Below are positions 477 through 46,500 of a stretch of 64,000 nt of DNA, piece by piece. This stretch comes from Haliotis rufescens (lineage: Eukaryota). Both the position numbers and the translations under genes were made by a program. Under the pieces are notes generated by a model. It saw only the letters and a program-made list of their open reading frames with translations, was not told the DNA's origin and searched no databases. Positions within the stretch are counted from its first letter, which is position 1, and every line of letters starts with the position of its first letter. Location: contig NW_025963779.1 in assembly GCF_023055435.1 (NCBI RefSeq), positions 21,328,001 through 21,392,000 on the forward strand, in the 5' to 3' direction.

Positions 477-8689
<8,213 letters not shown>

Positions 8690-12749: not shown

Positions 12750-15700
12750 ATGGGATCTGGATCTAGTAAGGAAAAGACAGGTAGGGTCGATACGAGGGGA
12801 GGGGGTTCAAAACCAGTCGCTGTTGCTAATGTAAATAACAACGTATCCATAAAGTCCACGACGGGTCATTCCAAAAGCGGAACCAATACGGACACCGGAA
12901 CGACGAATCAATCACCGTCGAAATCACCCGTTAAAGACTCAAATGTTGAAAAAACTACTACGGAACGTTCTCCAAGTAAGTCAGTTAAAACTGACAAAAA
13001 ACCCGTCAGTAAACTGGAATGGAATAGTGACTCCGACCTCGACGACGATGACTGGGACGACTTCCTCGGAAAGACGACTTCAAAACCAGTGCCCAAACCG
13101 GACTCTAAAGTGTCACATGGGGAACAAGAGCAGACCGCGCATAACGAAATGAAAACTCAGGAACTATACCCAGAGACCTACGCACAACGCCACACGCGGC
13201 AACAGTACACATTCGGACAGGATAGGTTGATTCGAGAGAAGACGATCTACAGGAACCCAGACGACTGGGGCTTTGACGAGGACAAGGAAGAAGTGACGGT
13301 AGGGGGAAGCCTTTCTTTATTCTAACCATTTGTCCAGTGAGAAATATATATTAAATATATTTTAAAAAAAAACACGTTAATATAGTGAGTGAGTGAGTGA
13401 GTTTGGTTTTACGCCGCTTTTAGCAATATTCCAGCAATATCACGGCGGGGGACACCAGAAATGGGCTCCACACATTGTACCCATGTCGGGATTCGAACCC
13501 GGGTCTTCGGCGTGACGAGCGAACGCTTTAACCACTAGGCTACCCGACCGCCCCCGACGTTAATATATGATTTATAATTATATTTGGAAAACAATAGACC
13601 AAACATCAAACATTTTCTTAAAGGGGCTGTCTAGACGTCAAATGAGTGGCATATGTGAAATATGAGATTCTTTTCGTCTACTTTTTCAATATTGTAATTT
13701 TTAACTATATATATTAACTACAAGAATGTTCTTCATAAAATTTGAATTTAAAGATTGTAGCAAATAGTGTTTTTGAGTACTTTGATAAAACTTGCTAGGA
13801 CTGCCTTTGTGTCTTGCCGTAGCTCCCCTTTAAGATAATATGAGGTAATTTACTTTATTTTACCGATACCAGCTAGATGTATTTAGGTCGTATTTTGCTT
13901 GGGTTCACCATGTGCACTATGTAGTAGAGGTACACATTTAAATCTCCTCCTGTAAGTCATAAGAACATAATTCTATAATAGCCGGCTATTCATAATACCC
14001 TGCAATCCTATATATCAGACATATAATATATTGGCGATTAGTTAATGAATCTTGAAAACACATAACTGACTGGGAATGTCATGTTATTTAACATGCAGAG
14101 TGCATAGGTACTGTAAAGTTATCTCTATTCACAGGCGTTGTATGGCGTTTTGTTTATTTATTTTAATCTTTGAATTTAACTTGACCTAATTCAGACAGTC
14201 ATGAAATATTTCTTAATATTTCTTGTGGTATATTTAGTTTCCATTGTTTAACATTTGTTTGATGTGTTATCATTGTAACTTGCTATACGTCGATAAAGGT
14301 AACTTGTGTTATGTAAACTACAGCTGACATGGTATGAATGGCTCTGTTTTATTCCCATTGCGACTGGTAGGAAGTAATTGAGGTATGTATTACTCTACAG
14401 CACGGCCAAACAATACTTCACTAGTCACTACACGCTAATCTGTAACGTGAGCTCCTTGCACTGTCAGCTGATTGCATGTTCGTTACCACGAATATGAAAT
14501 TTTGATTGACTTCAGTCAACCGAGGTCACCCCATTTCTAGCAACCAGGGTTGACTAGAATCAACCAGTGTTGACTAGAATCAACCAGTGTTGACTAGAAT
14601 CAACCAGTGTTAATCAAGGGTCAAAGATAACAAATAACACGTCTAGAATATTTCAATACTGGGCCACAGTTTCCGCGTAACTTACACAATTACATCAAAA
14701 ACGTGTATGCACCTTTTCACTCTTGCCATGTCTTTAGTTTTGAATAACAACCTCTCCAAAAAATAACTTTGAACAGAAAGGAAGAACATTTCTTACCCCA
14801 TTGGCTTGAGAAACTGATATTTTGTAAAACTGTGTAAGTTACAGTGTCCACGAAACATGTGAACCCTTGTCTTCTCCTTCGGTATATGTAACAAGGTATT
14901 TTACATGTAAATTATAATTAGAAGGTTTACTGTCAATGCAATAGCAAATATGTGCTCATAAGTTAAATTATCAGTGAATATAAGTGAGTGAGTTGGGTTT
15001 AACGCCGCTTTTAACAGTGAGTGAGTGTGGTTTTACGCCGCTTTTAGCAATATTCCAGCAATATATCAGCGGGGAACACCAGAAATGGGCTTCACACATT
15101 TTACCTATGTCGGGAATCGAACCCGGGTCTTCGGCGTGACGAGCGAACGCTTTAACCACTATGCTCCCCGACCGAACCGCATTTAACAGTATTCCAGTTA
15201 TATCACGGCGTGTCAGCTTAATGTGGGAGGAAAGCCCGAAGTGATGCAGGTCTCAGACGTTTACCACTTCGGTGAAACCCACGAGCACGGGTTTGGTGCT
15301 GACAAACCTAGAAACATAATCGGGGCGAACCGGGATTCGAACCCACAACCATAGGTTTCTGGCATGCCCAAAGGACGCAACTCTGCACAGCGAATCTCGG
15401 CGCCTTAGACGACTGGGACACCCGTGCCCCATTGAATATAACTACATGTTGACACCATGTATCTTATGCAAATCAATTACGTGTGGTGTACAAAATGCCC
15501 CGTTATCTCTGAACATGGTACACATGCAAATTTGTGTAAATTTCATAGTTTCATGTATGCATATCTAGGCTTGGCCTGAATCGGTTTAATCGGCCTTTCT
15601 ATACACTTTTATTTTAGAATGCCATTGTCACCTGTTTTTGGCCTTGTATCAAAATAGTGCAGACGTACGTTTAATGTACAAAATAAAAAGCTGTGTATAG

Positions 15701-18700
15701 CGTCAACATACCCGTTCATACAAGGATTAACAATACGTCTTGATGTTAGTATATATGCCTTTGGTAATTTCACAGGACTTCTGCCATGACGCCTTGGTAG
15801 AAGACTACATTCATCAGCCTACGGTACTCATTTCGCGGGTTCGAACACCGTTGACGATACACTTTTATCTGAAATTGTCCTAGCGTCTTAGTAAATGATA
15901 GGGAAAAAAGAAGTTTAACTTACAATTCAATTAGTCAATGTCTGGTCAAGACAAGGAAGCCATTCTTTAAATACTAGTATAAGATATACGCCGTGTAGAT
16001 ATTACCATTAACGTGCGATGTGTATACGTTCACCAGGTCAAGGATACCACAGCCGATGATTCGATTCGCCAAAGTTTTATCTGTCATTAATTGCATTAGA
16101 TATTACCGCATTGCTATACATAAAGTGACAATGCTATTTGAGATTGAGTGGTATATTTACACCATAAAATAGACAACGTGTTACTTAATCTTGTTTATAA
16201 AAAAACGTCCGAACCCATGAAGCCTGTAATATTTTTTAGAAATCTTATTTTTGGAATTTATTATGTCACTGATCAACGTTACCCTCCGGAACTGTTGTTG
16301 GCTGACGAATATTCTACTTAAAGTATCCACGCCGGTTTGAAGTAATTCAGCTCGTATATATTAATGTACAGTAAACTACGGTTATAACGAACTCAACGGG
16401 ACTACTAATTTTAGTTCGTTATAACCGTAGTTCGTTATAAGTACATATACAGCATGACTACAGCAAGTAGTCGGGACCAAAAAGTTAGTTCGCTATATCC
16501 GCCAGTTCGTTATAAGCGTGTTCGCTATAACCGTAGTTTACTGTATATCTACAGAATAGTGTCACTGACATTATTTCGACGGAAGCTGAATTGTAAAAAG
16601 ATCTAAACGAGCCTTTCTCAACAGTTCAACTTTTATTGAAAATTTCTTTGCACTATAAAGACCAGAAGAATCGTCAGAGTAACACCAAACGCGGTCCTAG
16701 AAAACATGCAGCTGATGTGTGAAATTGGTATCAGAGAGCCTGTGAATATACTACTCAACTTTGGATAGGTATATTCCATGATACACAAAACTGCATGATT
16801 CTTAAGTGTACATTTGACATATCTCAGTATCCCTTTCAAAAGTTGAGTAGTATGATATGCTTAATGCGGTTCACTAGAAACTGCACTATTTATCAGTATT
16901 CCTGGAGTAACATATCACGTTTAGTTCCACGTGGACTATAAACCACAGGTATCCTGATTTACGTGTGGTGTTGAACAATAAAACAGTAACCTTATACCTA
17001 AACCACAGACCCGCAGGTGCAAGGTGAACACGATACAGCGATAAGACAGGGCTGCATTGTTGAGATGGCTGTGTGAATTACAGAGGAAATGCTACCATGG
17101 TAATACCGAATACCATCTGATTTTTCACTTCTCACACGTGTCTCATTTGCTCACCTCTGATTCCGAATATACTACTTAACACAAATCTCAATAGAACATA
17201 TTGGAATTCACTCTTCAACGGCATACGAAAAAATATATAAATACTTCAGAATAAATAATGCCACTTTAATGGTGATTTTGCGTTTCTTTTTTAACTAATT
17301 TTTGTTTAACCTAATGTAAATACGTAATACAGACATCATTGTTGATTTAATGTAAAATGATATCACAACGTAAGAGGCGTCTTCGCCATTACAGGTAAAG
17401 TTTGGATAATAAAGAGATTAGTGTGTACGCGTGCGTGCTTTACACCTTTCACGAAACTTGTGTCCGAATCCTAGTTCTAGTAATCTAAATGCAAATACTC
17501 AGACACTCGTTTCATGAGCCATTACGACACACGTGATACTCTCTATGCATTGCATATGGCGTCGTAGGGGTATGTCAGCACGTTATCTGTGCTGTGTCTA
17601 TCCTTATGACAGTGTCCCCGCCTGTGTTGTTCTAAGCTGGTCACGGTGTTGCCATTATGTCCTATTGTGACTCGTTGATTCCAAAGTTGAAACACGTAGG
17701 AGAACCCAGAAATCGGTACGTACAGAACCAAAATGTGAAGTCAGTAAATAACCACACAAGATCAACGAATAATTGACAAATTATTTTTAAATACGCAGGA
17801 TGAGGTTTACAATCACAAAAACAATACGATGGGTCCAATATGTGACAGCAGCAATAAATAACAGGCACTATTACACAAGTCAGTGCACACACGAATGTCG
17901 AAGAATTAGTCACAGTCAAATGCCTTGAATGAGGCTCGTGTTCCGTTCTTGAGTCCAAGACATAGTGTTGGGCGCAGGCCAGAATTCATTGCTTTGTATC
18001 CTGTACTCACTGGGCAAGTTAGGTAACAGAAGGAAGCCTTGAATCACCTTCGTCTCGCTCTTTTATTGGTCCAGAACGTCCTCAGTGTTGTCGAACCTGG
18101 ACTAACATTTAGTCCCAGAAATAAAGTTATCTTATTTAACAAAAAATATCTACAAAATACAATAAACAAAATAGACCCGTGAAGATTCCGGGGTATAGAT
18201 TGGTCTTCAGCAACCCATGCTTGCCGTAAAAGGTGACTATGCTTGTCGTAAAAGGCGACTAACGGGATCGGGTGGTCAGGCTCGCTGAATTGGTTAATGC
18301 ATGTCATCGATCCCAAATGCGTGGATCGATGCTCATGATATCAATCACTGGTATGTCTGATCCAGACTTGATTATTTACAGACCGCCGTCATATAGCTGG
18401 AATATTGCAGAGTGCGGCGTTAAACAACCAACCAACCATCCAATAAACAAAATACAAATCGAGCCCAGAACAATGCTTAATTTCAGAGCTGAGGTCTAGA
18501 CCTGCCAAAGAATTCTAGGCTTGAGTTGGGTTCCCTTTTTAATTTATTCGGTACGGTCGAACCAGGGTCGGTAACTGTTTCCAAGCCTGCATGCAAGTCC
18601 CTCACAGTGGCGCTCTCTGTATTGCCGGGACAATAACAGTCACAATAACTGCCTCCGTAGATGGTGTAGTAGATGAAGCGACTGCCCGGAGGGCGGAAGT

Positions 18701-18906
18701 CAGTGGTTCGATCCCCGGCCGCGCCATACAAAAAGGCGTCCAAAAGTTGTTACTTGTTGTTGCCCTGTCTGGTGCTCGGCATTAAGGGGCAAAACAAGAG
18801 TCAGTTTACTGTGTCTCTGAGTTGGGGGTAGCATTGATAAACGGCGGAATGGTATCTCATTGGGCTAGCACTAAAAAGCGGCGTAAGTCTAGGTAGCTAT
18901 AGCACA

Positions 18907-18941
<35 letters not shown>

Positions 18942-21900
18942 GTGTATACGTGTTGCTATATAGTAATTGCGTTTGTTTGCTGCCATGACACGCCTCGGTA
19001 GGTCCTCACACACAGGCTGAAGTTAGAATCAATGATTATGATGCACATACTTCAATAACCGGATGATGCTTGATATTAATTAGTATCGGTCCGGATATCG
19101 GTTTCAGATGAACGTCCAAAAAGATTAATTATTTCCCGCGAAGTCAGCTTTGAATCAAAATAGGTCTCTTTCGGTTTACTGTTGAGTCAGTCCTGCTGGT
19201 TTTCCGGGGAGGGATGTGTTCCGCCCTTCATCTCCTTCTAACCCGTCGGACCCGTGAGGATCCGGGTTAGAATAGGTCTTCAGCAACAAATGCTTTCCGT
19301 AAGTGGTGACTATGCTTGCCGTAAGAGGTGACTATGCTTGTCGTAAGAGGTGACTATGCTTGTCGTTTGAGCCGACTAACGGGATCGCTGACTTGGTTGA
19401 TCCATGTCATCGTATCCCAATTGTGTAGATCTATGCTCATGATGTCAATCACTGGATTGTCTGGTCCATACTGGATTAATTACAGACCGCCATCATAGAA
19501 CTGAAATCTTGCGGCGTTAAACAACAAACAAACAAACCTTACCCGTCGGGGCGGATAGGAACGTGCATGTTGTTCCACGGGAGGCCATCATTCCTGCTTC
19601 ATCGATCCCCCACTGGGGCTCACACCATTCTCTCTTATAATATGTATTCACTTATTGATGCAGCATGCCTATAATTCTGGCAGGTCATAATCCCAATGCT
19701 GTATGTGTAGTCTTAATCAAATATATCCTTGGCGACGTGTGAAGGTTTTCTCACCTAGATCTACGGGAGTGGGCGCTGTTTTCACCTCGGGTGCTGAGTC
19801 ACGTAGAGCGCGTTGCTAATTAAGAAACACGTATAAGGGCGAAACTATGTTTACATAAATCTATTCAAATAATCGATACGTGGATCAGTTATTAATACCG
19901 TTTTAAAATGTAAAAATCAATTGGTGCCAGTGCCAGATTACCGTTTTTCTAAAAATTTAAACATATTGGTTTTGATTTCTTGTCTAAAGACAGTTGAAGT
20001 TGGCAATATTTTGTATAGGGACTATACATAGACTATATATATACACCACACTGTGCATTGTTACTTTGAACTCATGACTCCTTCAGTTTTTGACATTGAG
20101 TGATAAAAACCAACAACATACTGAGACTGCTTTCAAAACATATTGTTTATTCTAGGCGAGTTTGCGACGTTACGATTACTTAAAACGTTTCTTTCACCAA
20201 AGCGCGTTCCCCCAACTCGGTTCAGGTAATCTAAATGCAAATAATACAGCGCTACGCTTTGTGCTGTGTACTTGATTAAGATTTGTGAACGCGTGGTCGT
20301 GTTGCCACCTAAGTACATACCATGATACACTAGGTGAACTCAACGAAACAGAATACATTGCATTCCGTTGACAAGTCTCACCATACAAACAATATACAGT
20401 ACCATGATTCAATATTTTATAGCAATGCAGAGTCAAAAATTCAATATGTCTGCAATACAGAGGAAATATTATCCTTCGACACAGACGGCATGTACTGTTG
20501 TATATCCCTGTACGCTGGAAGTGAGATTGGTCGTTGTGTGCGGGGAAATGGACTGTCGGGTGGTGGGGTAGCCTAATGGCTACAGCGTTCCCTCGTCACG
20601 CCAAAGACTTGGGTTCGAATCAACACAAGGGTAGAGTGTGTGAAGCCGATTTCTAGTGTCCCCCCATTAATTTCTCGCAGGAATATTGCTAAAAGCGGGG
20701 TAAAAACATACTCACTCACTCTCACGTAGCATCTCCACATTGAACTTTCACAAGACCACGTGACTTCTTCACATTGCACTTTCACAAGACCACGTGGCAT
20801 CTCCACATTGCATTTTCACAAGACCACGTGACTTCTACACATTGCACTTTCACAAGACCACGTGACATCTTCACATTGCACTTTCACAAGACCACGTGAC
20901 ATCTTCACATTGCACTTTAACAATATCACGTGGCATCTTCATATTTGGGCTCGACCACATAACCTAACATTCGACACTGTTGTCTTCACGTTGCATTCAC
21001 TACACACCCCCGCCGTGATATTGCTGGAATATTGCTAAAAGCGGCGTAAAACCATACTCACTCACTCACTACACAACATCCTGTCAGCTGCTGAATGTTA
21101 GTTGAGCCTTTACAGTTGAAAGGATACGCCATGTTTGATTCATTTCAGGCAACCAAGGGGTTTGATGCCTCCAAGTTCCGGGCTGCGAACCAGGGAAAGG
21201 TAGGTTGCTTCTGCCGTTGCTGGTCGCTATCACCGCTATTTATATGACTATCACACAAACAACATGCGCTGATTTAGACAGGTTCCGTCGCATCATGATC
21301 ATCCAAGCTTATTCCATCCAGTAGCAAATGGTGAATGTTTTGTATTTATAAGTGAGACATGCAAGAACTCCTATAGTAATCAACTTCTCATTTTGTTACA
21401 GCCTGTTCGAGAAAAGGACATTTTCTCCACTCAAGACGGTAAGTTTAAAAAATAGATAAGCCATTAGTGATCCGACGAAAGTTAAACACAGCTGTTTGTT
21501 TCTTTAATGCCACACTCAGCAGTGTTCCACCCATGTGACAACGGCCTGTAAATAGTCGAGTCTGGACCAGACGATCCTGTGACTGATATCATCATCCACG
21601 TTGTTGGGGTACGATGATACGCAATCAACAAAGTCACCTAGTCTGAATGCTCGATTGCTGTGGACCAATTCTCATCCTGAATCCCCACGGGGTGACAGCT
21701 ATACACCTGTGTAGATGATTACTTTTCAGTGGATTAACTAGCATCTCTCAGCAGAACCACAAAGCCTCGACCACATGGTCGTGAAACTGACATTAAGAAT
21801 AATTTGTTTGTTTGTTAGTTGTTTGTTCAGCCATATGACGGGGTCTGTAAATAATCGAGACTGGAACAGTCAATCCAGCGACTCACATCAACAGCATCGA

Positions 21901-24761
21901 TCCACAGAAATGGGATATGCATTAACCAAGTCAGCGAGCCTGTTCACCCGATCCCTTTAGTCGCCATCTTCCCGAGGCAAGAGAGTTAACTGACTATAAA
22001 AGTCCAGTTTCCACCCTTGTCGAACTAGGCTGGTATTATGGAGTTACATTTTGGCTGGACTAACGAGTCTATGCATAGTCCAATCAAAATCGCGCACCGA
22101 AATTGAAATCCGGTTCGTAAACTGTCGTGCAGATTTCGGTCGATTGCAGGATTTGCAAAGCATGTGCACCACCAACTCGTTGTCAGCAGATATTTTCAAA
22201 ATCTTCTCATGTTTTTAATCAAGGTGCTCACGTGATTTGATGCATTTCGCGATGTAAGACCCGTTTTATCACAATATAGATATTGATTATCGATCAGATC
22301 GTCCTGACCGGGCGCAACCATTTTGTGTGAAGCAAACGCAAGTGATACGAGAGGTGGAATCTGATTGGTCCTTAGGAGAGGCTTAGAAGGGACATAATTG
22401 GTAATAGCCACTGGTGGCGCTACGATCGAGCCCAGTAATTCCAGCCTAGTTCGGCAAGGGTGGAAACTGGACTTTAAAAGTCAGTTAACTCTCTTGCCTC
22501 GGGAAGATGGTTAGTCGCCTCTTACGACAAGCATGAGGTGCTGAAGAAAGATTTAGAACCTAGCCGGATCTTAAAGAGGGATAATCATTATTAACATGGG
22601 GCGTCGCTGTAGGCAGAATACAAAATGTCGTAGAAATGGCAGGCATCGTCTAGACAGTAGAACTCCTAGTCTTATTAGTCAAGTCTAGTAGTTTATCCGG
22701 ACAGTTTCTTATCCGGACGAATTCACCAGGAACACTCGCCCAGATTAACGGGGATTCACTGTAATATGTTATCTCTAAGTTGATATAAAATAATTAATAT
22801 ATTTTAATCATAGTGCGTCCGAGACATGTGTTATGTGTAACTTGTCGTGTTTTATTTCAGAGTTTGAGACGCCTCGATATCTCCGGTCCAGTGAGCCAGA
22901 GGAACAACAGACGACCGTTAGCCAAAAGCCCACGTGCGTATTTATACACTGATGACACTTACCATGACTTAAGCGTTTTGCTGTTCACGTATACACTTCC
23001 AGTGTAAAGGTAGTATGAACTTGGACGGGCACGAGTGGCCAGTAATCTAAAGGCGCTGCAATTCTCCCTTAGGTGTGCCATAAATAGTTTTTGAATCCCC
23101 GATTCCTTTGATTATGTTTCTAGGTTTGTCAGCACCATACGCGTGTCCGTGTGATTTACCAAAGCGGTAAAGAAGATCCGGGGTAGAATAGGTCTTCAGC
23201 AACCCATGCTTGCCGTAACAGGCGACTGTGCTTGTCGTAACCGGCGACTGTGCTTGTCGTAAGAGGCGACTAACGGGATCGGGTGGTCAGGCTCACTGAC
23301 TTGGTTGATGCATGTCATCGTATCCGAATTCCGTGGATTCATGCTCATGATACCAATCCCTGGATTGTCTGGTCCAGACTCGATTATTTACAGACCGTCG
23401 TCATATAGCTTGAATATTGCTGCGTGCGGCGTTAAACAACAAATAAACAAACAAACCAAAGCGATAAACGTGTAGGACCTTCATCACTTCGGGCTTTCAA
23501 GCTGCACGTCGTACTGTAACTGAAAAACTGTTTAAAGCAGCTTCAAACTCACTCACTCATAATAACGAATCTGATACGTGTTAACAAACTACATTTTCCC
23601 TCGACAGTCGGGTGTCAACCGAACGTGTGTTTAGTCGGAATCGTATAATCGATTCTGCTGTATGCAGAGATTTATATTGGAAATGGAAAGGGTTTAGTCG
23701 CTTTATTTACATGCGTGAATCAGAAATTGTATTGTACTAACCGATCCTGGCGTGTGATACCTTGGTTATACCATATCCTATTCATCGATTAAACGTTTTC
23801 AATAATGTACATCGCCACGGCGACACGACGGTTGAACTAATGGCTAAAACTAATGTACATTGCTAGAACTCGTCGACCGTTGCAGGACTTCAATTAAATG
23901 ATTGCAGAAACGATTCTCTCCGGTTCTGAATAATACACGAGTGCAGACGACACCGTGGGTGATATATTGTCAATGTTAATACGTTAATGACAGTCAAATA
24001 AAACGTTGAAAGCCATGTTCATATATGACCAACATACAATTTACTGTGGTACCGTTGAATATGAACCTTTTAAGAATTCACAGTTTTAGTTACATAGTTT
24101 TTAAATTTTCGTCCATTTGCGGCTTAAACCCATGAAGATCCGGGGTAGAATAGGTCTTCAGCAACCCATGCTTGCCCTAAAGGGTGACTATGATTGTCGT
24201 AAGAGGCGACTAACGGGATCGGGTGGTCAGGCTCACTGACTTGGTTGATGCGTGTCATCGTATCCCAATTCCGTGGATCGATACTCACGATGTCAATCAC
24301 TGGATTGTCTGGTCCAGACTCGATTATTTACACACCGCCGTCATATAGCTAAAATCGTGCTGAGTGTGGCGTTAAACAAATAAACAATAACAAAAATAAC
24401 ACATGTATATTTTATGACTCACCTAACCTTCCAGCTCAAATGCCGTTGGTCCTAAAAAAATAGTTAGTGTATAGCAACGAAATCCATTACTTGGGACAAG
24501 GGGGCGACGGGTAGTGGATTACTGGGATGTTCGTAAGAGGCCAGTTATTGTTTTAGTCACTGTTTTAAAACGTTCAGCCATCTTTTCTGGATGGTCATAT
24601 GGTCCGACCCTTGTTGTAGATGGGTGGTGTTCTGTTGCAGACCGATGGTGCTCCCCCAATACAACAAGGAGGAGGAAGACCTGATGGCCCAGTTGATGGA
24701 GGACGATGATGACTTCTTCCCTCATCAAGCCATGCACCACTCCAACATCATGACGTTCTGA
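12750..24761 (+). CDS. Uncharacterised N-myristoylated protein with cystin-like termini, 5 exons, 276 aa
   Basis: Exons: 12750-13298 (MGSGSSKEK...YPETYAQRH...DWGFDEDKEEVT), 21149-21199 (ATKGFDASKFRAANQGK), 21402-21438, 22861-22933 and 24641-24761 (PMVLPQYNKEEEDLMAQLMEDDDDFF...TF*). Junctions are GT-AG with phases 0,0,1,2 all compatible, 831 nt in total. The gene model is well supported; the identity is tentative. Confidence 0.8.
13385..13556 (-). mobile_element. tRNA-derived SINE family B (~170 bp, (ACTC)n tail)
   Basis: A box TAGCCTAGTGG, B box GGTTCGAATCCC, 11-bp TSD ACGTTAATATA. Other copies: 6621-6781(-, TSD CTAATGATCAGA), 7534-7693(-, TSD ACAATACATACAG), 52979-53138(+), 1692-1811, 5218-5360, 15018-15180, 20563-20722, 43694-44110, 46383-46500, 61415-61530. 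Confidence 0.92.
13622..13829. mobile_element. Kolobok-like MITE
   Basis: TTAA|AGGGGCT...AGCTCCCCT|TTAA. The TIR is short. Confidence 0.55.
14541..14612. repeat. 20-bp tandem repeat, ~3.5 copies
   Basis: Unit TGACTAGAATCAACCAGTGT. Confidence 0.9.
16369..16543. mobile_element. Tc1/mariner (pogo/Tigger-type) MITE
   Basis: TA|CAGTAAACTACGGTTATAACGAAC...GTTCGCTATAACCGTAGTTTACTG|TA, with internal GTTCGTTATAA subrepeats. Confidence 0.88.
18174..18440 (+). mobile_element. SINE-like family A (GACCCGTGAAGATCC head, (CAAA/CAAC)n tail), full-length copy
   Basis: 14-bp TSD CAATAAACAAAATA (18160-18173 and 18441-18454). About 20 further copies or fragments, e.g. 1462-1688(-), 3228-3452(-), 9250-9433(-), 10355-10552(-), 19249-19538, 23172-23456, 24127-24390, 26364-26617, 28427-28967, 31695-31955(-), 40322-40590, 41512-41800(-), 47018-47250, 49430-49668, 52676-52910(-), 59712-59952. 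Confidence 0.9.
18908..18937. repeat. (CA)n microsatellite at the end of a SINE D copy
   Basis: Direct inspection. Confidence 0.95.
20729..20941. repeat. 34-bp minisatellite, ~6 copies, each with CACGTG
   Basis: Unit CACATTGCACTTTCACAAGACCACGTGRCWTCTY. Confidence 0.92.
21965..22509. mobile_element. MITE with ~70-bp TIRs, copy 2, inserted in a family A SINE
   Basis: Near-perfect TIRs, with TTAGTCGC duplicated on both sides (21957-21964, 22511-22518). A right-end fragment also occurs at 26880-26988. Confidence 0.9.
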
Positions 24762-26624
24762 GTTCCAATCTGTCAACAGTCTATCTGGCTGGGAATCCTG
24801 AGACAGTTCACTCTACACACTAAGAAGTACATTCGAGCAGAGGGCTTGATGCACTTTTGTTATCGGCATCAAATTAATGTATGCTGAAAAACTACTTTGG
24901 TGCGTTTCAGATTCAGTTGTGATTGCTGCTATACAAACATTCAATCATAGATTCTACTGTAACAGAGACCTGCATCACTTCGGGCTTTCCTCCCACATTA
25001 AGCTGACACACCATGATATAACTGGAATACTGTTAAAAACGGCGTTAAACCCAACTCACTCACTCACTCTACTGTAACAGATTTACTGTCAACATGTTGA
25101 GAACAATGTCCAGTAACTCTGTGCTGAGGACAACCCTCTCAATGCACATTGCAAGTGTGGCGGCCATTTTGAATTTTCAAGATATATCAAACATTCTTTG
25201 CTGCACATGGGGGATATGTTCCAAACAAATAACAGAGGTAGAAACCAACATTTTTAGTCCACTAGTCCTCACAATAACATATAGCAAAACCCTTAAAATG
25301 GCAAATGTCTACTTGTCCTTATGATACCTTAACTATTGGGTTTTCCAAGGACTACACTTCTAGTGCCAATTTCTAACACTGAATTAAACTGTTCTCAGTA
25401 TTTCAGCTGAGGAGACTCATAATATGTTACCCAAGTGGTTGTTTTGAGAAACCAGTCAGTTTGAGTTACAACTAGATGACAAATCTACAACTACTACACA
25501 GCAATGACCGTACCACCCATCTAACCCCTGGTGAAAACATTTTTATGAGACCCTATTGGGTTTATTTGTTATTTTCATGCCTACTCAATTTGAAAAATGC
25601 TGTGATTTGAGTCTCTGTTTTATCGTCAATTAATGACAGACATATATACAGACATTGTCTACCATCACTTTTGTTTCTTAACTTGGTGAGTTAGGTAATT
25701 TTTATTTTCAGTTTTATAGGACAAGATGCATGAGCCACAATCATAAGTCCATTACAAATAACTGAACAAGTTTAACAAACTAATAACTTATATTACAAAT
25801 GCCTGTTGGTCATATGTTCTTTTGTTTTATTTTCATGATGTAATGATATGTCAAACTATATATTATTTATCATCCACAAATAATCTTCCACAGGAGATAT
25901 CAGCCATATCAGATGGAACAGCAGACCATTGTGACATCATCGGTTACCATGACAACACTATCAAATGACATCACCAATGCATCTGCCACTGGTTAGGTGT
26001 TCTTGTTACACTCATGACACTGGTTATTACTAAAATAAAATTGGGAGAATGTTTTTGATGATAAATAGGATTTTTCCATAGTGTCTTTTGATATAAAACG
26101 TAAATTAAAATTTAAAACTCTGAGGCATAACCTGTTCTGTTATGTTTTATATCAAATGACACTTGAGCGAGATTCGCTCCTTCCCAACCCCTGCTGGACA
26201 CAAGCACAGTGCCTGAGAGAATGTTGAATTACAGAGCAATATTCCAGACAAATGTTGGGCATCAGATCTTACATTAGGACTTTCCAACATTGAGAGGATT
26301 ATTTCAGTCAGGGTATTTTCAGCTGGATCACAAAATCAATTTTGTCATCTTCATTCTTTCTCGGACCCGTGTTAGAATAGGTCTTCAGCAACCCAAGCTT
26401 GCCGTAAAAGGCGACTATGCTTGTCACAAGAGGCGACTAATGGGATCAGATGGTCAGGCTTGTTGATGCATGTCATTGATCCCAATTGCGTGGATCAATG
26501 CTCATTATATTATTCACTGAATTGTCTGGTCCAGACTTGATTAATTACAGACGCCGTCATACAGCTGGGATATTGCTGTGTGTGGTGTTAAACAACAAAC
26601 CAACCAACCAACCAACCATCATCA

Positions 26625-40500: not shown

Positions 40501-43500
40501 GTCTAGTCCAGACTTGATTATTTACAGACCGCCGTCATATAGCTTGAATATTGTTGAGTGCGGCGTGAAACAACAAACAAACAAACAAACAGTATTGTTC
40601 AAAATGTAATGAAATGTGGTGTATGTGTAGTTAGTAGTTGGCCTCAACATGTATGGTCTGTTTTTTGGTGGTAATAAAATTTTGACCTTTATTTTATCTT
40701 TTCACTTTGGAACATGCCCTTAAATTCTTTCAAAATGCTCTTCCATGCATTTCCTCAGAAACCACTTGACCATCACGAGATTTCACATGCTTGGTCAAAC
40801 CGATGATGACATAATTTGTTCAAGAGCTTCAAATCTGATTTTCGATCTGGCTGCCCTGGCAGTTATGATTAGATATATTGGAAAACGTTTTTATGGCTGT
40901 TGCTCAGCCATTTCTTCTTAGTATGTAATGCAATGCCCTTAAATTCTCACAGTGCATTTTTGGCTCTGTAAACATCTTATCGGAAATCACCAGACTGAGG
41001 AAGCTGACCTTTGGCATCTATATTTCTCCTAATGATATATTTTGTTCGAATTGTAATTTGTTATACTATTGGCCTCAGTATTTATGCAGACAAAATTTAA
41101 TAGTAAATCTGACATCTTTCATTAAGTGGCAGTCATTTTTAACATTTACAGCTGTTGATTACATATCCAGGTGAGCTTCAGTGTGATGGCACCCACTATT
41201 TTTAGAAATCTTGATTGATTCCTCTCATTAAGTTTTTATGTATACATTTCATACATATCAAAGGAATGTTAAGTCACTTAGTCAGTGTAGGAATACACTC
41301 TAACAAGGAACTGTCCTGGTGCTCTGCACAGATGGTAAATTTTCATTTGTATCAGTTCGACTAACCGCAGGTGATGGTATATACCATCAATTCCTTTTAC
41401 ATTCGATCATTGTTACACATTCTGCATCACTTAGTATTAACTAAACCTAACCTAAAATAATGTTCATGCACTCATACATCACTTTTTGACCTTACTGTCT
41501 GGATACCCCTGTGTTTGTTTGTTTGTTGTTTTACGCCGCACTCAACAATTTACTTGGATATGTAGTTTGTTTGTTGTTTAACGCCACACTCAACAATATT
41601 CCAACTATATGATGGCTGTCTGTAAATAATCAAGTCTGGACCAGTCAATCCAGTGATTGATGTCATGAGCATCGATCCACGCAATTGGGATCGATGACAT
41701 GCATTAACCAAGTCAGCGAGTCTGACCACCTGATTCCGTTAGTCGCCTGTTAAGGCAAGCATGGGTTGCTGAAGACCTATTCTTCATGGATCTCCACAGG
41801 TGGATTTCCCTGTGGTATCAGCAGCCTATGCGGCTCATAAGAGGTGACTGATTGGGTAGTCAGACTTGGTAACTTGGATGACTGCATGTCATCATCCCCT
41901 GACGGCTTGAACTGTCGCTCGTAATATCAATCGGGGTTGTCGTGTCTAGATTTGCTTGTTTACAACTGTCAACTCGATGGAATATTGCTGAGTGTAATAT
42001 TATTATTAGATATGTATATTGTTATGGAGAGTAGTGTTTAATGCTAGTTTCTCCTCCACTACCCCAGTTACTGATGAGCTGCGCGCGATGGTCCTGAAGC
42101 TGGAGAACCGAGTGTCGGCGCTGGAGAGAGGATCCGGCGTCCCAGCAGCATCAGCATCAGCACCTGCAGCAGCAACACCATCCAAGCCTGCTGACGACGA
42201 TGACGACGAGGATGATGATGATATGTTTGGAAGTGATGATGAGGAAGAGGTTTGTGGATGATACACACTATCCGTAGCCACAGAGTGGGATGAGGATGGA
42301 TATAGGAATGGGTGCTGTCAGTCCCTCTGCCCTGCCGTCACATTTTGTTGCTGGAGCAATACTCAAAGATCGTTCAATATTTCTTGATGAAACTATGCAC
42401 AGATATAAGTCTAATCATGAACTGGTGACTTGTACATTTTCCATTACAACAAATAGGACTTAGGTGTAAATGAGGGTAGGGATTGTTTCCAGAGTGTAAC
42501 TCAGCGAATGTTTAATATTTCTTGATCAAACTACACAAATATTAGTCTAGATATGATCTTGTGCAAGACAGCAGCCTGGTAGATAGTGCAAGATAGCAGC
42601 CTGGTAGATAGTGCAAGATAGCAGCCTGGTAGATAGTGCAAGATAGCAGCCTGGTAGAAAGTGCAAGATAGCAGCCTGGTAGATAGTCCAAGATAGCAGC
42701 CTGGTAGATAGTACAAGATAGCTGCCTGGTAGATAGTGCAAGACAGCAGCCTGGTAGATAGTGCAAGATAGCAGTCTGGTAGAGAGCAGCCTGGTAGATA
42801 GTGCTAGACAGCAGCCTGGTAGATAGTCCAAGATAGCAGCCTGGTAGAAAGTGCAAGATAGCAGCCTGGTAGATAGTGCAAGACAGCAGTGTGGTAGATA
42901 GTTTATTCATGTGTTGATGCCTATAGTGTGAGGAATATGGTAGCATGATGTGGTTCTTCAAGACGATGACTGTTTGTGTTGTGTGTCTTCAGGCAGCAGA
43001 GCTTGAGAGACTGAAGGCCGAGAGAGTGGCAGCCTACAAAGCAAAGAAAGCAAGCAGTAAGTTCACTGACATGTTTATAGTGATAGAAAAGGGAAGTAAG
43101 TTATAGGAAATGTAGCTTCTGATGTTATTTCAACACCTTGTTGCTTTTGCCTACCCTGCCAGGAAATGATGAGAGTGTTGTCACAGCCCACTGAGTTTCT
43201 ACCTCATGTATGACTCCGATGTCATGGAATACCAGGGATTTTGAACTATGCATTTTAACCATTAATTTTTTAGTAACTTTTGGTCCGTTGACATTCAGAA
43301 AAATATCAAACTTGAGCAACTAACGGTCTTCAGCATCCATTCGGTACCTCACATTCTATTTATTCTCTATATTTATGAAGCTGAATGCAGCTAATCGATC
43401 GTAGCTTGAAGACATGGCCACTGCATGGTTTGTCTTGATTACTGAATGTGGCATTATGCAACTATCTTATTGAAATCAGATCTTAGTTCTTGCTGTCGCT

Positions 43501-46500
43501 AAGCAAAGATCTGATGACCTCCCATTACGGGTATCGGCAGAACCTTTCATCCAACTTGTTGGAGTGACAGTCGGAATGTGTTTTCTAATCATGCAAATTT
43601 GATGCAACCTTGAAGGTTAACACGAGGTATTCTGAACGACAGTAACTGGTTGTATGACTGATTCCAACATAATCATTGTCTATCTCCCGCTTCAGGGCAG
43701 TGGTGTAGTCTGGTGGTTAAAGCGTTCGCTCGTCATGCTGAAGAGTGAGTGAGTGAGTTGGGTTTTTAACGCCGCCTTTAACAGTATTCCAGTTATATCG
43801 TGGCGTGTCAGCTTAATGTGGGAGGAAAGCCCGAGGTGATGCAGGTCTCAGACGTTTACCACTTCAGTGAAACCCACGAGCACGGGTATGGTGCTGACAA
43901 ACCTAGAAACCTAATCGGGGCGAACCAGGATTCAAACCCTCAATCATAGGTTTCTGGCGTGTCCAAGGGACGCAACTCTGCACAGTGAATCGCGGAGCCT
44001 TTTGATTCCCCACTTGGGTACAAAGTGTGAAGCCCATTTCTGGTGTTCCCCGCCGTGATATTGCTGGAATATTGCTAAAAGCGGCGTAAAACTATACCCA
44101 CCTACTCACTATCTCTCACTTCAATGTGATGAACATTCGAATGGAAGGTGGGAAGTACTGTCATACAATCTAGGCCGTCTATTAGTCATTCCAAAATGTT
44201 CTTTTGTTCAGTTTTCAAATTTTGAATTGAGAACTTTGTCAAAGCGTAGTCCAGAAGGGAAGTGGCCACCTTGAAACTAGCGCTGTATAGCTCAAGCTGC
44301 TTTCTGATTGGCTAATGTCGACTTCATGTTAGTCATTTCATTGGTAGGTCAAAGTTTGCGAAGGGTTGTTCTGATGTGACCTGTTATTGGATGTCCTCAG
44401 ATCTGTGTTTATCTGTAGTGAAAACAAAGATCTGATTTTTATAAGATTGCTTTAAACAATAATCAAACAATCCATCCTTAAATTTGTAGTATGCTAATAC
44501 AACGTATAGATGTAAATGCAAAGTGAAATATCAGTGAGAGATTAATGTGAGTGCTACTGTTATCACTGTGGACAGGCAGTCTGACCTTGTCAGACATTGA
44601 AGTTTTTATAGAGGACATTGGTGAAAACTAGGGCTGCAACGAATACACTATGAGGCGAATACAATTCATATCACGAATATAGGGTAACGAATACGAATAT
44701 TTATTCACAAATACAAAAACGAGTCAGCAGTTGATGTATAATTGATTATATTTAGTGAAAAATAACAACATAAATTATTTGACATGGTTGGATAATTTGT
44801 AATATATTATACATTTATATACTGCATTTATTCAGGTACTAGTATCTGCTCAAATACGATAATGACCGGTGACCACAATACTGTCATATTATATATATGA
44901 GTGTTGTCTTTAAAGAAATCTCTGCATATAATATGTTTTTATGGATATTTTTAGATACAGGGTATGTAGATGCACATGACTGCATGTTCGTAAATATTCG
45001 ATTCTAGTGACTACGAATAACGAAATCAATTCATGAATAGATACAGAGTGAATCGTAACAGCCCTAGTGAAAACCACCCACTTGTTCTTCCTGAACACTG
45101 TACTGCAGTCAAAACTTGTAATACATGTTACAATGGTTACAATTCACTGTAAGTAAGGCATGGATGACACGTCTCAGATGGTTCAATGGAAATGGTGTTG
45201 GTTGATGATGAGCGTGGTTGGGTAGTCTCATGGTAACAGTGTTCTATATGAGAAGGACCCGCAAAAGGTGACTATGCTTGTCGTAAGAGGTAACTAACAG
45301 GATTGGGTTGTCAGACTCGCTGACTCGGTTGATGCATGTCATCATATCCCAATTGCGTGTATCGATGCTCATGATGCCAATCACTGGAATGACAAACAAA
45401 CAAATAAATCTATATGTGAAGCCTTCTTCTGGTGTACCCCACCGTGNNNNNNNNNNNNNNNNNNNNNNNNNNNNNNNNNNNNNNNNNNNNNNNNNNNNNN
45501 NNNNNNNNNNNNNNNNNNNNNNNNNNNNNNNNNNNNNNNNNNNNNNNNNNNNNNNNNNNNNNNNNNNNNNNNNNNNNNNNNNNNNNNNNNNNNNNNNNNN
45601 NNNNNNNNNNNNNNNNNNNNNNNNNNNNNNNNNNNNNNNNNNTGCTAAATGTAGAGTAATGCTATATCCACATGTGGTGGTAGTGGGGTTGTCACACATG
45701 CCTACCCACATTGATGCCTATCTCAATACAATATGTATGCTGTACCTATTTTGTGTCGTTTTTGCATGGTCAAACAAGATGCCATTGCTATCAACCAGTA
45801 TGTGCTTAACTTGCATGACTGGTCCCAACTTTCCTGTTACAACCATGCAATCAGATTTAGCTTTTGTTTTAGTGTAGGTGTTGAGGTAACACTAGCCTAA
45901 GTTAGTAAGTAGTTATCAGGCCGGGTGATTGCAAACACTTGTAAAGGTTATTTTTTCAAAACTGAAACAGCCTAAAAACGTGAATCGATTCATGGGAAGA
46001 TGTATCATGTATCATGTATCATTTGGTGTTCAATTGTGATGGTTCAATAATCATCAGTTGTTAATAATGTGTGGTGACTGGTGAGTTACAGTTAGCTATG
46101 TCCTGTCCTAATATGTGTGTGATATAACAGAGCCAACATTGATTGCCAAGAGCAACATCATCCTGGAGGTGAAGCCGTGGGATGACGAGACAGACATGAA
46201 AGAGTTGGAGCAGAAGGTTCGCGAGGTGTCCACCGACGGCCTCAAGTGGGGCAGCTGTGAGTAGCCACCACCATTTGTGTACAGCCATTATGGGGCAAGG
46301 GATTTTCAAGTATTTACCAGTATTATCTTTTCCATGAAGTTGATAAACATTATACAGTTTGTATGTTATAAATCAAAACTGGGCTGGGGGGTAGCCTAGT
46401 GGTGAAAGTGTTCATTCATCATGCCAAAGACACGGGTTCGATTCCCTTCATGGGTACAATGTGTGAAGCTGCAAGTTGCATAAAACCAAAATCACTCACT

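What the first reader, a model, noticed from the sequence alone, without database searches (positions are those of the whole stretch)
12750..24761. Candidate invertebrate homologue of cystin (CYS1, the cpk polycystic-kidney ciliary protein)
Seen: a 5-exon gene that the ORF track shows only as exon 1. It starts MGSGSSK, has a long S/T/K/P low-complexity region and ends KPTPMVLPQYNKEEEDLMAQLMED. Known (from memory): human cystin starts MGSGSSR, is N-myristoylated UNC119 cargo for cilia, is mostly disordered and ends KKPERPAAISYDHSEEGLMASIERE; it is usually treated as vertebrate-restricted. Inference: matching motifs at both termini (MGSGSS; KP...Y-x-x-x-EE-x-LMA) suggest deep homology that BLAST would miss. 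Extra blocks (YPETYAQR, IYRNPDDW, FDASKFRAAN) may be ancestral motifs lost in mammals. The vertebrate AxEGG ciliary signal is not evident.
Basis: partly seen in the sequence, partly recalled or inferred. Interest (0 to 1): 0.78.

Follow-up and report, generated by a model that had tools for sequence, protein, structure and literature searches.

The report
Abalone relative of ciliary protein cystin
This is a real, expressed five-exon abalone gene from a little-known animal-wide family of lipid-anchored, mostly unstructured proteins, and profile comparisons link that family to mammalian cystin, the ciliary protein lost in a classic mouse model of polycystic kidney disease.

Summary
Window 12750-24761 (+) carries a five-exon gene of Haliotis rufescens, NCBI LOC124114603 isoform X2, 276 aa. 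All splice sites are canonical. Transcript contigs of 3 of 4 runs join exon 4 to exon 5 exactly.

It belongs to a family named only "uncharacterized" in molluscs, annelid, nemertean, chelicerates, an ostracod, hemichordates and a sea urchin.

A profile of 22 invertebrate members was searched against 5.8 billion proteins. Besides family members it returned only four mammalian cystin-1 proteins, best E 0.02. hhalign gives 95% probability, E 3.3e-8, over the last 22 residues. The N-terminal MGSGSS motif, the motif's distance from the C-terminus and the phases of the first and last introns also agree.

Limits:
- The link rests on about 29 residues.
- Abalone alone does not match cystin.
- AxEGG is absent.
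- A synteny test was negative.
- The bridging fish and amphioxus sequences could not be fetched.

Verdict: probable distant cystin homologue (about 0.7). It is a new variant of a known kind. Ciliary function is inferred, not shown.

The parts
12750..13298 (+). Coding exon 1 (aa 1-183). It holds the start codon, the myristoylation motif, the long S/T/K/P/N-rich low-complexity region, an acidic SDSDLDDDDWDDF patch and the YPETYAQR...KTIYRNPDDW block. The donor is ACG|gtaggg, phase 0.
   Evidence: genome-wide profile hit at E 4.8e-33
12750..12770 (+). N-terminal MGSGSSK: predicted N-myristoylation signal (Gly2, Ser6, Lys7) with small residues at positions 3-5.
   Evidence: of the 123 (of 140) family proteins that start MG, S6 is present in 123, G4 in 117 and S/T/A at position 3 in 122. 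Three of 4 cystins start MGSGSSR. The cargo rule comes from passages of PMC6179904.
13167..13268 (+). Conserved block Y140-W173 (YPETYAQRHTRQQYTFGQDRLIREKTIYRNPDDW). It is invariant at P, E, T, Y, A, Q, R, Y, R, K, T, R, N and W across the 23 aligned molluscs.
   Evidence: A1 invariant columns. One search shows it in annelid and nemertean but not in the deuterostome or arthropod rows.
21149..21199 (+). Coding exon 2 (aa 184-200, ATKGFDASKFRAANQGK), phase 0 at both ends.
   Evidence: depth in bin 21131-21261
21158..21190 (+). GFDASKFRAAN block. This is the family-wide GFD..KF...N motif (D, F and N invariant in the 22-row bilaterian alignment).
   Evidence: invariant D188, F192, N196 of P0111; 65 of 66 full-length members; 0 of 4 cystins
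21402..21438 (+). Coding exon 3 (37 nt, PVREKDIFSTQD plus the first base of the next codon). Acceptor ttacag|, donor G|gtaagt.
22861..22933 (+). Coding exon 4 (73 nt, ...EFETPRYLRSSEPEEQQTTVSQKP plus two bases of the Thr codon). Donor AC|gtgcgt; the intron that follows is phase 2.
   Evidence: contigs X1 rec 5, X3 rec 14 and X5 rec 21 end this piece at 22933 and continue at 24641
24641..24761 (+). Coding exon 5 (third base of Thr237, aa 238-276, stop at 24759-24761). Acceptor tgttgcag|.
24654..24707 (+). C-terminal motif PQYNKEEEDLMAQLMEDD. This is the abalone version of the family motif P.YD.[ST]EE.L[ML]A.[IL]E.E[LFY], which aligns with the last 22 residues of cystin-1. In abalone the usual Ser/Thr is Glu, and the motif is followed by a lineage-specific 17-residue tail.

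Best explanation
The locus is a real, spliced, single-copy gene. It encodes the abalone member of a bilaterian family of small proteins (about 230-310 aa), and mammalian cystin-1 is most likely a shortened descendant of that family.

Proposed working. All steps below are inferred except where marked:
1. Gly2 is N-myristoylated co-translationally (motif MG[ST]G.SK). Together with a mildly basic first 30 residues (net +3), this tethers the protein to membranes.
2. Because positions 3-5 are small, the lipidated N-terminus fits the rule described for high-affinity UNC119 cargo, which ARL3-GTP releases in cilia. A GMP_PDE_delta-family chaperone gene is present in the abalone genome (shown).
3. A long disordered linker carries short conserved docking blocks: YPETYAQR...KTIYRNPDDW and GFDASKFRAAN.
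4. The acidic C-terminal motif, which I infer to be an amphipathic helix (no structure prediction could be run), is the partner-binding end. It corresponds to the 25 C-terminal residues of mouse cystin, which were necessary and sufficient for binding the MAGE-family protein necdin in yeast two-hybrid.

Shown here: the gene model, splicing, family membership and the statistical link of the family to cystin-1 at both termini. Not shown: lipidation, UNC119 binding, ciliary localisation, or any partner.
For: Gene and family:
- The gene model and splicing rest.
- The abalone genome has a single locus (1 match among 8 scored candidates, E 4.8e-33).
- The family is solid. The exon-1 search found 34 proteins at E<=0.01, from 5e-113 down to about 1e-2, all named ones molluscs. 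The 50-sequence mollusc profile against 1.84e9 representatives gave 70 hits at E<=1e-3. Those looked up by name include hemichordates, sea urchin, scorpion, horseshoe crab, sea spider, ostracod, annelid and nemertean.

Link to cystin:
- The profile A4 (22 invertebrate sequences, no vertebrate) was searched against 5.77e9 proteins. The only hits at E<=10 outside the family were 4 mammalian cystin-1 proteins carrying PF26203, at E 0.02, 0.099, 0.15 and 1.1.
- hhalign of A4 against 4 cystins gave probability 95.1% and E 3.3e-8 over 22 columns at the extreme C-terminus of both.
- Saccoglossus against bat cystin is 15 of 22 identical, E 6e-7 for the pair.
- The A4 HMM scores the cystins at 27.3-33.0 bits (about 26 from the C-terminus, about 5 from the N-terminus), against a maximum of 6.2 in 10000 shuffles.
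- In the reverse direction, a cystin-only HMM lifts 28 of 140 family proteins above the best of 2800 decoys.

Collinear architecture:
- The same N-terminal hexamer MGSGSS is present.
- The motif Tyr lies 16-19 residues from the C-terminal end in 61 of 66 full-length members and 18 in 4 of 4 cystins.
- The first coding intron is phase 0 and the last is phase 2 in abalone. The same follows for human CYS1 by arithmetic from passages of PMC8440558.

Other support:
- For Saccoglossus P0111, the language-model atlas places a chordate cluster (0.95), the mollusc cluster (0.93) and a chordate cluster with PF26203 in 30% of members (0.92) as the three nearest.
- The function of the cystin C-terminus comes from the abstract and passages of PMC3859662.
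- The UNC119 rule comes from passages of PMC6179904.
- GMP_PDE_delta hits lie at two abalone loci.
Against: - Detectable similarity to cystin covers only about 22 C-terminal and 7 N-terminal residues. Everything between is unalignable, and the mid-region 'LD..L' resemblance failed a shuffle test.
- The abalone protein itself is not detectably similar to cystin, so the claim for this locus is transitive.
- The precomputed Pfam column shows no PF26203 on any invertebrate member.
- AxEGG, the motif reported to target cystin to cilia, is absent from 140 of 140 family proteins.
- Synteny gives no support. Homologues of three genes that I recall as neighbours of human CYS1 (RRM2, a GRHL/CP2 gene, NOL10) all have a hit on contig C112, and none on the window's contig C1.
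- The best E-value, 0.02, is suggestive rather than overwhelming, and only 8000 word-selected candidates of 143-455 aa were scored.
- The mollusc-only profile did not bring cystin in at E<=1e-3.
- A separate chordate cluster of about 222 aa is nearer than the Cys1-labelled one in the atlas. I could not see it. It may be the true orthologue, leaving cystin a paralogue.
Confidence: 0.68

Rival explanations
1. Only short linear motifs are shared, not common descent of the genes. A myristoylation signal with small residues and an acidic C-terminal helix that binds a conserved partner could have arisen independently. Alternatively, the small terminal exon could have been captured by an unrelated myristoylated gene in the vertebrate lineage.
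For: - The similarity is confined to about 29 residues.
- The motif sits on its own short last exon in abalone and, by arithmetic, in human, which would make exon capture mechanically easy.
- Cystins have no GFD..KF or PETYAQ block, and the family has no AxEGG.
- There is no shared synteny.
- Pfam's Cys1 model does not cover invertebrates (precomputed column).
Against: - Two independent motifs occur at the two ends in the same order, with the same spacing of the C-terminal motif from the stop (18 residues in 4 of 4 cystins; 16-19 in 61 of 66 members).
- The intron phases are the same at both ends.
- Size and disordered make-up are similar.
- No other protein family appeared in the two large searches (the 23 hits I read as sequences all carry family blocks, and the rest were already in hand or unread; 4 of 4 non-family hits are cystin-1).
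- Identity reaches 15 of 22 with a deuterostome invertebrate, which is more than a degenerate docking motif usually keeps.
Confidence: 0.22
2. The family is homologous to cystin, but cystin-1 is not its direct counterpart. Vertebrates keep another, unnamed orthologue (the chordate cluster of about 222 aa seen in the atlas), and cystin-1 is a divergent, shortened paralogue. This rival is nested inside the best explanation and concerns orthology only.
For: - In the atlas a chordate 'hypothetical protein' cluster of 222 aa ranks above the Cys1-labelled cluster for both abalone (0.89 against 0.88) and Saccoglossus (0.95 against 0.92).
- The Cys1 Pfam label covers only 30% of the members of the 189-aa cluster.
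- Synteny with the human CYS1 neighbourhood is lacking.
Against: - No chordate protein other than cystin-1 appeared at E<=10. Among the hits whose names I looked up (20 proteins), none was a chordate.
- Atlas scores are leads without alignments. The 222-aa cluster could simply be non-mammalian cystin-1.
Confidence: 0.2
3. The gene model is an annotation artefact, with exon 1 an independent ORF and the downstream exons chance matches.
For: The ORF track shows only exon 1. Exons 2-4 are very short (51, 37 and 73 nt).
Against: - Contigs of 3 of 4 runs join 22933 to 24641 exactly, and one is 1030 letters long with the upstream length expected for exons 1-3 plus 119 nt.
- Every exon-encoded block is conserved across phyla.
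- All splice sites are canonical.
Confidence: 0.02

Closest known systems
Cystin-1 (CYS1 / mouse Cys1, the cpk gene product; Pfam PF26203 Cys1)
   Same: - N-terminal MGSGSS[KR] myristoylation signal with small residues at positions 3-5.
- A basic stretch after it (net charge of residues 1-30: +3 in abalone, +5 to +6 in cystins).
- A mostly low-complexity body.
- The C-terminal motix YD.SEE.LMA.IE.E[YF] lies 18 residues from the end.
- A large first coding exon ends in phase 0, and a short last exon follows a phase-2 intron.
   Different: - Cystins are shorter (151-170 aa in the four seen, against 276) and Pro/Ala/Gly-rich rather than Ser/Thr/Asn/Lys-rich.
- They lack the GFD..KF and PETYAQ/KTIYRNPDDW blocks.
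- They have 3 coding exons rather than 5 (PMC8440558 passages).
- The family lacks AxEGG.
- The Pfam Cys1 model does not match invertebrates (precomputed column).
- The abalone motif is degenerate (YNKEEEDLMAQLMED) and is followed by an extra tail.
Unnamed bilaterian family ('uncharacterized protein' in Saccoglossus LOC102805039, Ptychodera, Lytechinus LOC121406507, Centruroides LOC111620829, Tachypleus, Pycnogonum, Notodromas, Owenia, Lineus LOC135502780, and many molluscs)
   Same: This is the family the abalone gene belongs to. It shares the N-terminal motif, the GFD..KF...N block and the C-terminal motif. With molluscs, annelid and nemertean it also shares the PETYAQ block.
   Different: Haliotis species carry a C-terminal extension after the motif and have Glu where most members have Ser/Thr (motif position 4: S 51, T 15, E 7 of 79). 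No member has a published function that I could find.
C. elegans CIL-7 (myristoylated regulator of ciliary extracellular vesicles and polycystin localisation)
   Same: A small N-myristoylated protein tied to cilia and polycystins, reported in invertebrates only. Its authors themselves mention cystin as a myristoylated cilia- and vesicle-associated protein (PMC4571341 passages).
   Different: [quoted passage not shown] That does not fit this family, where position 3 is S, T or A in 122 of 123. I had no CIL-7 sequence from any tool, so relatedness was not tested. It is a functional analogy only.
Other high-affinity UNC119 cargo (NPHP3, GNAT1, LCK, FMNL1)
   Same: [quoted passage not shown] The family has S/T/A, G and mostly S/G/A/P there.
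   Different: These proteins are unrelated beyond the N-terminal signal. Position 5 is K in 8 of the 123 family members that start MG, which may break the rule in those species.

Membership tests
Cystin-1 (CYS1; Pfam PF26203) | N-terminal myristoylation signal MGSGSS[KR] | tested here: met
   Abalone starts MGSGSSK. Three of 4 cystins start MGSGSSR, and the fourth (echidna) model has a different start. The family is conserved here. Lipidation itself was not tested.
Cystin-1 (CYS1; Pfam PF26203) | Polybasic stretch after the lipid anchor (myristoyl-electrostatic switch, as named in PMC8440558) | tested here: inconclusive
   Net charge of residues 1-30 is +3 in abalone, with a family median of +3 (range -7 to +7), against +5 to +6 in cystins. 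The stretch is basic but weaker and variable.
Cystin-1 (CYS1; Pfam PF26203) | AxEGG ciliary targeting motif | tested here: not met
   The pattern A.EGG occurs in 0 of 140 family proteins. It fits only 2 of the 4 mammalian cystins as a strict pattern.
Cystin-1 (CYS1; Pfam PF26203) | Conserved C-terminal ~25 residues (necdin-binding region in mouse) | tested here: met
   At family level: hhalign 95.1%, E 3.3e-8; HMM 27-33 bits against at most 6.2 in 10000 shuffles; same distance from the C-terminal end. For the abalone protein alone the match is weak (6 of 12 identical, E 0.079).
Cystin-1 (CYS1; Pfam PF26203) | Match to the curated Pfam model PF26203 | tested here: not met
   The precomputed Pfam column is '-' for every invertebrate member and PF26203.1 for the four cystins. 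I could not run the model myself, because it is not in the local library. The local Pfam also gives 0 families for true cystin P0141, so the blank carries no weight.
Cystin-1 (CYS1; Pfam PF26203) | Gene structure: large first coding exon ending in phase 0; short last coding exon after a phase-2 intron | tested here: met
   Abalone structure. Human structure by arithmetic from 318 coding nt in exon 1 and a 53-bp exon 2 (PMC8440558 passages).
Cystin-1 (CYS1; Pfam PF26203) | Conserved chromosomal neighbourhood | tested here: not met
   Ribonuc_red_sm, CP2 and NUC153 hits all fall on contig C112 (CP2 and NUC153 also on C235 and C168). None falls on C1, where the window lies. The human gene order used is recalled and comes from no tool.
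Cystin-1 (CYS1; Pfam PF26203) | Localisation to the ciliary membrane; UNC119/ARL3-dependent delivery | not testable with these tools
   Only permissive evidence: small residues at positions 3-5 (rule), and GMP_PDE_delta-family genes in the genome.
Bilaterian MGSG...GFD..KF...YD.SEE.LMA family (unnamed) | All three shared blocks in order, of similar length | tested here: met
   P0001 scores 2.3e-73 against profile A2, which includes P0001 itself among its 20 rows. Independently, exon 1 alone finds Patella at 1.6e-13 and bivalves down to about 1e-3. Of the 66 members with both ends, 65 have FD..KF.

The most novel reading that the evidence does not exclude
Cystin is not a vertebrate invention. 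It is the reduced mammalian form of an ancient bilaterian lipid-anchored adaptor.

Its C-terminal helix, known so far only as the necdin-binding end, is conserved from molluscs to mammals and so predates necdin. That implies an older, still unidentified conserved partner, perhaps the single ancestral MAGE/NSMCE3-type protein.

The GFD..KF block kept in invertebrate deuterostomes marks a second interaction that mammals lost. Haliotis replaced the conserved Ser/Thr of the motif by Glu, which hints that this residue is normally phosphorylated.

If this is right, sea urchin, annelid or mollusc larvae would become simple ciliated models for the function of a polycystic-kidney-disease gene.
Probability: 0.4. 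Interest if true: 0.75.

Novelty: new variant of a known kind. Interest (0 to 1): 0.62.

Why it matters
Cystin is a human and mouse recessive polycystic-kidney-disease protein. In the papers I read passages of, its molecular role was studied only in mammalian cells. None of those passages mentions an invertebrate counterpart, and my phrase searches found none.

A conserved bilaterian family would do three things:
1. It shows which parts of cystin are under very old constraint: the lipid anchor and the last 22 residues, not AxEGG.
2. It suggests that the interaction made by the C-terminus is older than necdin.
3. It gives experimentally easy ciliated invertebrates in which to study it.

It also gives names to dozens of "uncharacterized" proteins, some of which carry misleading automatic names (one search shows 'TBC1 domain family member 5 homolog A-like', 'myb-like protein X' and 'protein kinase 4-like').

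Tried and rejected
1. Local Pfam scan of four family members: 0 families at E<=10. This carries no information for the question, because PF26203 is not in the local library and true cystin also gives 0 families.

2. The mollusc-only profiles did not list cystin. One search gave 97 hits at E<=10 of 2700 candidates, all named ones molluscs. One search gave 70 hits at E<=1e-3. Only the broader 22-sequence profile reached cystin.

3. A third collinear block: the family's ...LD..L... against the LLDQLL of the cystins. hhalign with loose settings aligns them at confidence 0-1. A block HMM did not score 3 of 4 cystins at all, and the fourth got -0.9 bits, reached by 189 of 10000 shuffles. Rejected.

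4. Synteny with the neighbours of human CYS1 was negative. The human gene order is recalled.

5. Solved structures gave nothing. There were 0 hits for A4, and for A5 only three chance Ala/Pro-rich matches at E 1.6-6.2.

6. CIL-7 as a possible member: its published description (coiled coils, leucine zipper) does not fit. No sequence was available to test it.

7. Literature. Searches found no paper on an invertebrate cystin homologue. One search was swamped by 'cystine'. A 2026 review table lists Drosophila 'Cys' beside CYS1 without evidence (passage). The papers PMC13056400, PMC150876 and PMC2794227 are not held. Supplements were not opened, and Supplemental Figure S1 of PMC4571341 (CIL-7 homologues) might bear on point 6.

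8. The direct abalone-cystin comparison is not significant.


Full report
**What is there.**
The window is from Haliotis rufescens. The exon-1 ORF (12750-13298) is 100% identical to NCBI 'uncharacterized protein LOC124114603 isoform X2', 276 aa (P0001). Laying that database protein on the window by tblastn and reading the junctions gives five coding exons:

| Exon | Coordinates | Notes |
|---|---|---|
| 1 | 12750-13298 | aa 1-183; followed by a phase-0 intron |
| 2 | 21149-21199 | 51 nt |
| 3 | 21402-21438 | 37 nt |
| 4 | 22861-22933 | 73 nt; followed by a phase-2 intron |
| 5 | 24641-24761 | includes the stop |

All introns are GT...AG, and the total is 276 codons. The full-length sequence used later is the database's own record.

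The protein ends ...LMAQLMEDDDDFFPHQAMHHSNIMTF.

**Expression and splicing.**
Twenty runs hold exon 1, and the tool only guesses that they are RNA. I laid the contigs of four of them (two studies) on 21000-24900.
- Three runs have a contig that passes from 22933 straight to 24641: X1 record 5 (1030 letters), X3 record 14 (1175 letters) and X5 record 21 (460 letters).
- In the fourth run, X6, a contig begins exactly at 24641 (table 8).
- X1 record 5 has 755 letters upstream of exon 4. That is what exons 1-3 plus a 119-nt leader would give.
- The depth in the bins holding exons 2 and 3 matches the depth of the X3 contig spread over 51 and 37 bases.
- Exon 1 itself lay outside the stretch laid, so the exon 1-2 junction is not seen directly.
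- The genome has a single matching locus, which argues against a processed copy as the source of the intron-less contigs.

**The family.**
- Exon 1 alone finds 34 proteins at E<=0.01, all named ones gastropods or bivalves.
- A 20-sequence profile finds 97 at E<=10 of 2700 candidates, adding a chiton.
- A 50-sequence mollusc profile, read by HMMER against 1.84 billion representatives, gives 70 hits at E<=1e-3.
- I looked up the names of 20 of these. Those that carried names are Ptychodera and Saccoglossus (hemichordates), Lytechinus (sea urchin), Centruroides, Tachypleus and Pycnogonum (chelicerates), Notodromas (ostracod), Owenia (annelid), Lineus (nemertean) and Tegillarca (bivalve). Nine carried no name.
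- Every one is 'uncharacterized', 'hypothetical' or carries an automatic misnomer.

Shared features:
- An N-terminus MG[ST]G.S[K]. Of the 140 family proteins in hand, 123 start MG. Among those, S6 occurs in 123, G4 in 117 and K7 in 103.
- A block GFD..KF...N, present in 65 of the 66 members that have both ends.
- A C-terminal motif P.YD.[ST]EE.L[ML]A.[IL]E.E[LFY], whose Tyr lies 16-19 residues from the end in 61 of 66.
- The YPETYAQR...KTIYRNPDDW block is invariant in molluscs and present in annelid and nemertean. It is not seen in the deuterostome and arthropod rows.
- Abalones are atypical at the C-terminus: Glu in place of the usual Ser/Thr, and an added tail.

**The link to cystin.**
- The 22-sequence invertebrate profile A4 (first row 260 aa, so candidates of 143-455 aa) returned 9 proteins at E<=10 from the 8000 word-selected candidates. 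Five were family members. Four were mammalian cystin-1, each carrying PF26203: Rhynchonycteris E 0.02 (33 bits), Dasypus 0.099, Choloepus 0.15 and Tachyglossus 1.1. The E-values are scaled to 5.77e9 sequences. Nothing else appeared.
- Profile-profile comparison of A4 with the four cystins gives 95.1% probability and E 3.3e-8 over 22 columns, the extreme C-terminus of both.
- Saccoglossus and bat cystin share 15 of 22 residues there.
- In my control, the A4 HMM scores the cystins at 27.3-33.0 bits, about 26 from the C-terminus and about 5 from the N-terminus. The best of 10000 composition-preserving shuffles reaches 6.2.
- In the other direction, an HMM of the four cystins lifts 28 of 140 family proteins above the best of 2800 decoys (10.7 bits), with Saccoglossus on top at 20.2. 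The three Haliotis proteins score -4.3 to 1.4.
- Abalone against bat cystin by BLASTP is E 0.079 for the single pair.

So the family is linked to cystin. The abalone gene is linked to the family beyond doubt, but the abalone protein by itself would not have revealed the link.

**Independent agreements.**
- Three of 4 cystins start MGSGSSR.
- The motif Tyr is 18 residues from the end in 4 of 4 cystins, which is where the family has it.
- Passages of PMC8440558 give 318 coding nucleotides in human exon 1 and 53 bp for exon 2. The two human introns are therefore phase 0 and phase 2, like the first and last abalone introns. The exact positions could not be compared.
- The language-model atlas, a lead only, puts three clusters nearest to Saccoglossus P0111: a chordate cluster (0.95), the mollusc cluster (0.93) and a chordate cluster in which 30% of members carry PF26203 (0.92). 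For abalone the same clusters score 0.89, 0.93 and 0.88.

**Disagreements.**
- A.EGG occurs in 0 of 140 family proteins, and in only 2 of 4 cystins as a strict pattern.
- Cystins lack the GFD..KF and PETYAQ blocks.
- A mid-region resemblance failed its control.
- The precomputed Pfam column shows no Cys1 domain on invertebrates.
- Homologues of three genes that I recall as neighbours of human CYS1 all have a hit on contig C112, not on the window's C1.
The bridging taxa, the intron positions and any structure therefore remain open.

**How it probably works.**
- The N-terminus has the hallmarks of an N-myristoyltransferase substrate (Gly2, small residue 3, Ser6, Lys7; established knowledge, also summarised in passages of PMC4571341).
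- Positions 3-5 are small, the feature reported for high-affinity UNC119A cargo such as cystin, NPHP3 and GNAT1 (passages of PMC6179904).
- The abalone genome has GMP_PDE_delta-family genes at two loci.
- Residues 8-135 are 78% polar or small and 15% hydrophobic. The atlas's own model of the Saccoglossus protein has mean pLDDT 0.47. Both are consistent with disorder.
- The C-terminal motif has hydrophobic residues at positions 8, 9, 12 and 16 among acidic ones, the spacing expected for one face of a helix. This is my inference.
- In mouse cystin the last 25 residues were necessary and sufficient for necdin binding in yeast two-hybrid, and were needed to antagonise necdin at the Myc P1 promoter (abstract and passages of PMC3859662).

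I therefore read the protein as a lipid-anchored, probably ciliary-membrane, flexible adaptor whose conserved C-terminal helix recruits a partner. The conserved Ser/Thr followed by acidic residues looks like an acidophilic-kinase site, replaced by Glu in Haliotis (S 51, T 15, E 7 of 79). That is speculation.

**Novelty.**
I found no paper that names an invertebrate cystin homologue. The phrase searches returned 0 papers, and the broader searches listed nothing relevant. Databases label the family 'uncharacterized'.

I rate it a new variant of a known kind. It is the same two-ended architecture as cystin, with extra conserved blocks and without AxEGG. Confidence in homology is about 0.7, and in direct orthology lower.

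Noticed in passing
window 53735-55150 (-): Uninterrupted 472-aa ORF with Pfam DUF4470 (E 4.4e-25) and DUF4471 (E 3.2e-106). I recall this domain pair from the axonemal dynein assembly factor DNAAF3. If so, a cilia-motility gene lies about 29 kb downstream of the cystin-like gene and is apparently intronless.
   Followed up: partly
window 21000-21130, 21917-22571, 23096-23488, 24013-24405 (introns of the gene); similar ORF peptides at 3163-3606, 18044-18316, 23196-23348, 24124-24300, 46856-47212: These stretches collect enormous summed contig depth (1e4-1e5) in all four runs and thousands of partly fitting contigs. The loose-end consensus contains GGTTCGAATCCCGG, which looks tRNA-like. The ORF track shows the same peptide (…PIPLVASYDKHS…) repeatedly. 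I read this as a very abundant, transcribed SINE-like retroposon family.
   Followed up: no
window 24705: The contig of run X1 (labelled organism A, unlike X3, X5 and X6, labelled organism B) lacks 3 bases here. That is one Asp fewer in the DDDD run after the C-terminal motif (table 4). It is an allelic or between-species length difference in the lineage-specific tail.
   Followed up: no
G000 contig C112 (16.03, 19.85 and 78.89 Mb): The Ribonuc_red_sm (RRM2-like) gene, a CP2/grainyhead-family hit and a NUC153 hit all lie on one abalone contig. I recall their human counterparts as neighbours on 2p25, so this may be conserved macro-synteny that excludes the cystin-like gene.
   Followed up: partly
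window about 42124-42252 (+): An acidic peptide (…[20 protein letters not shown]) turned up as a chance tblastn match. It resembles the acidic linker of elongation factor 1 beta/delta.
   Followed up: no
window about 45.3-45.6 kb: A run of N (seen as X in ORFs 45244-45711 and 45308-45877).
   Followed up: no
proteins P0021, P0024, P0027, P0038, P0061: Bivalve members of this family carry automatic names that look wrong for them: 'TBC1 domain family member 5 homolog A-like', 'myb-like protein X', 'protein kinase 4-like', 'glycosyltransferase-like protein gnt14' and 'probable WRKY transcription factor protein 1'. These presumably come from low-complexity Asn/Ser/Lys matches.
   Followed up: no
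proteins P0105 / P0129 (Lineus) and the X2 label of P0001: Lineus isoform X1 has 14 extra residues right after the GFD..KF block. The abalone record used is isoform X2, so an alternative exon or splice site in the same region (between exons 2 and 4) probably exists here too. I did not see isoform X1.
   Followed up: no
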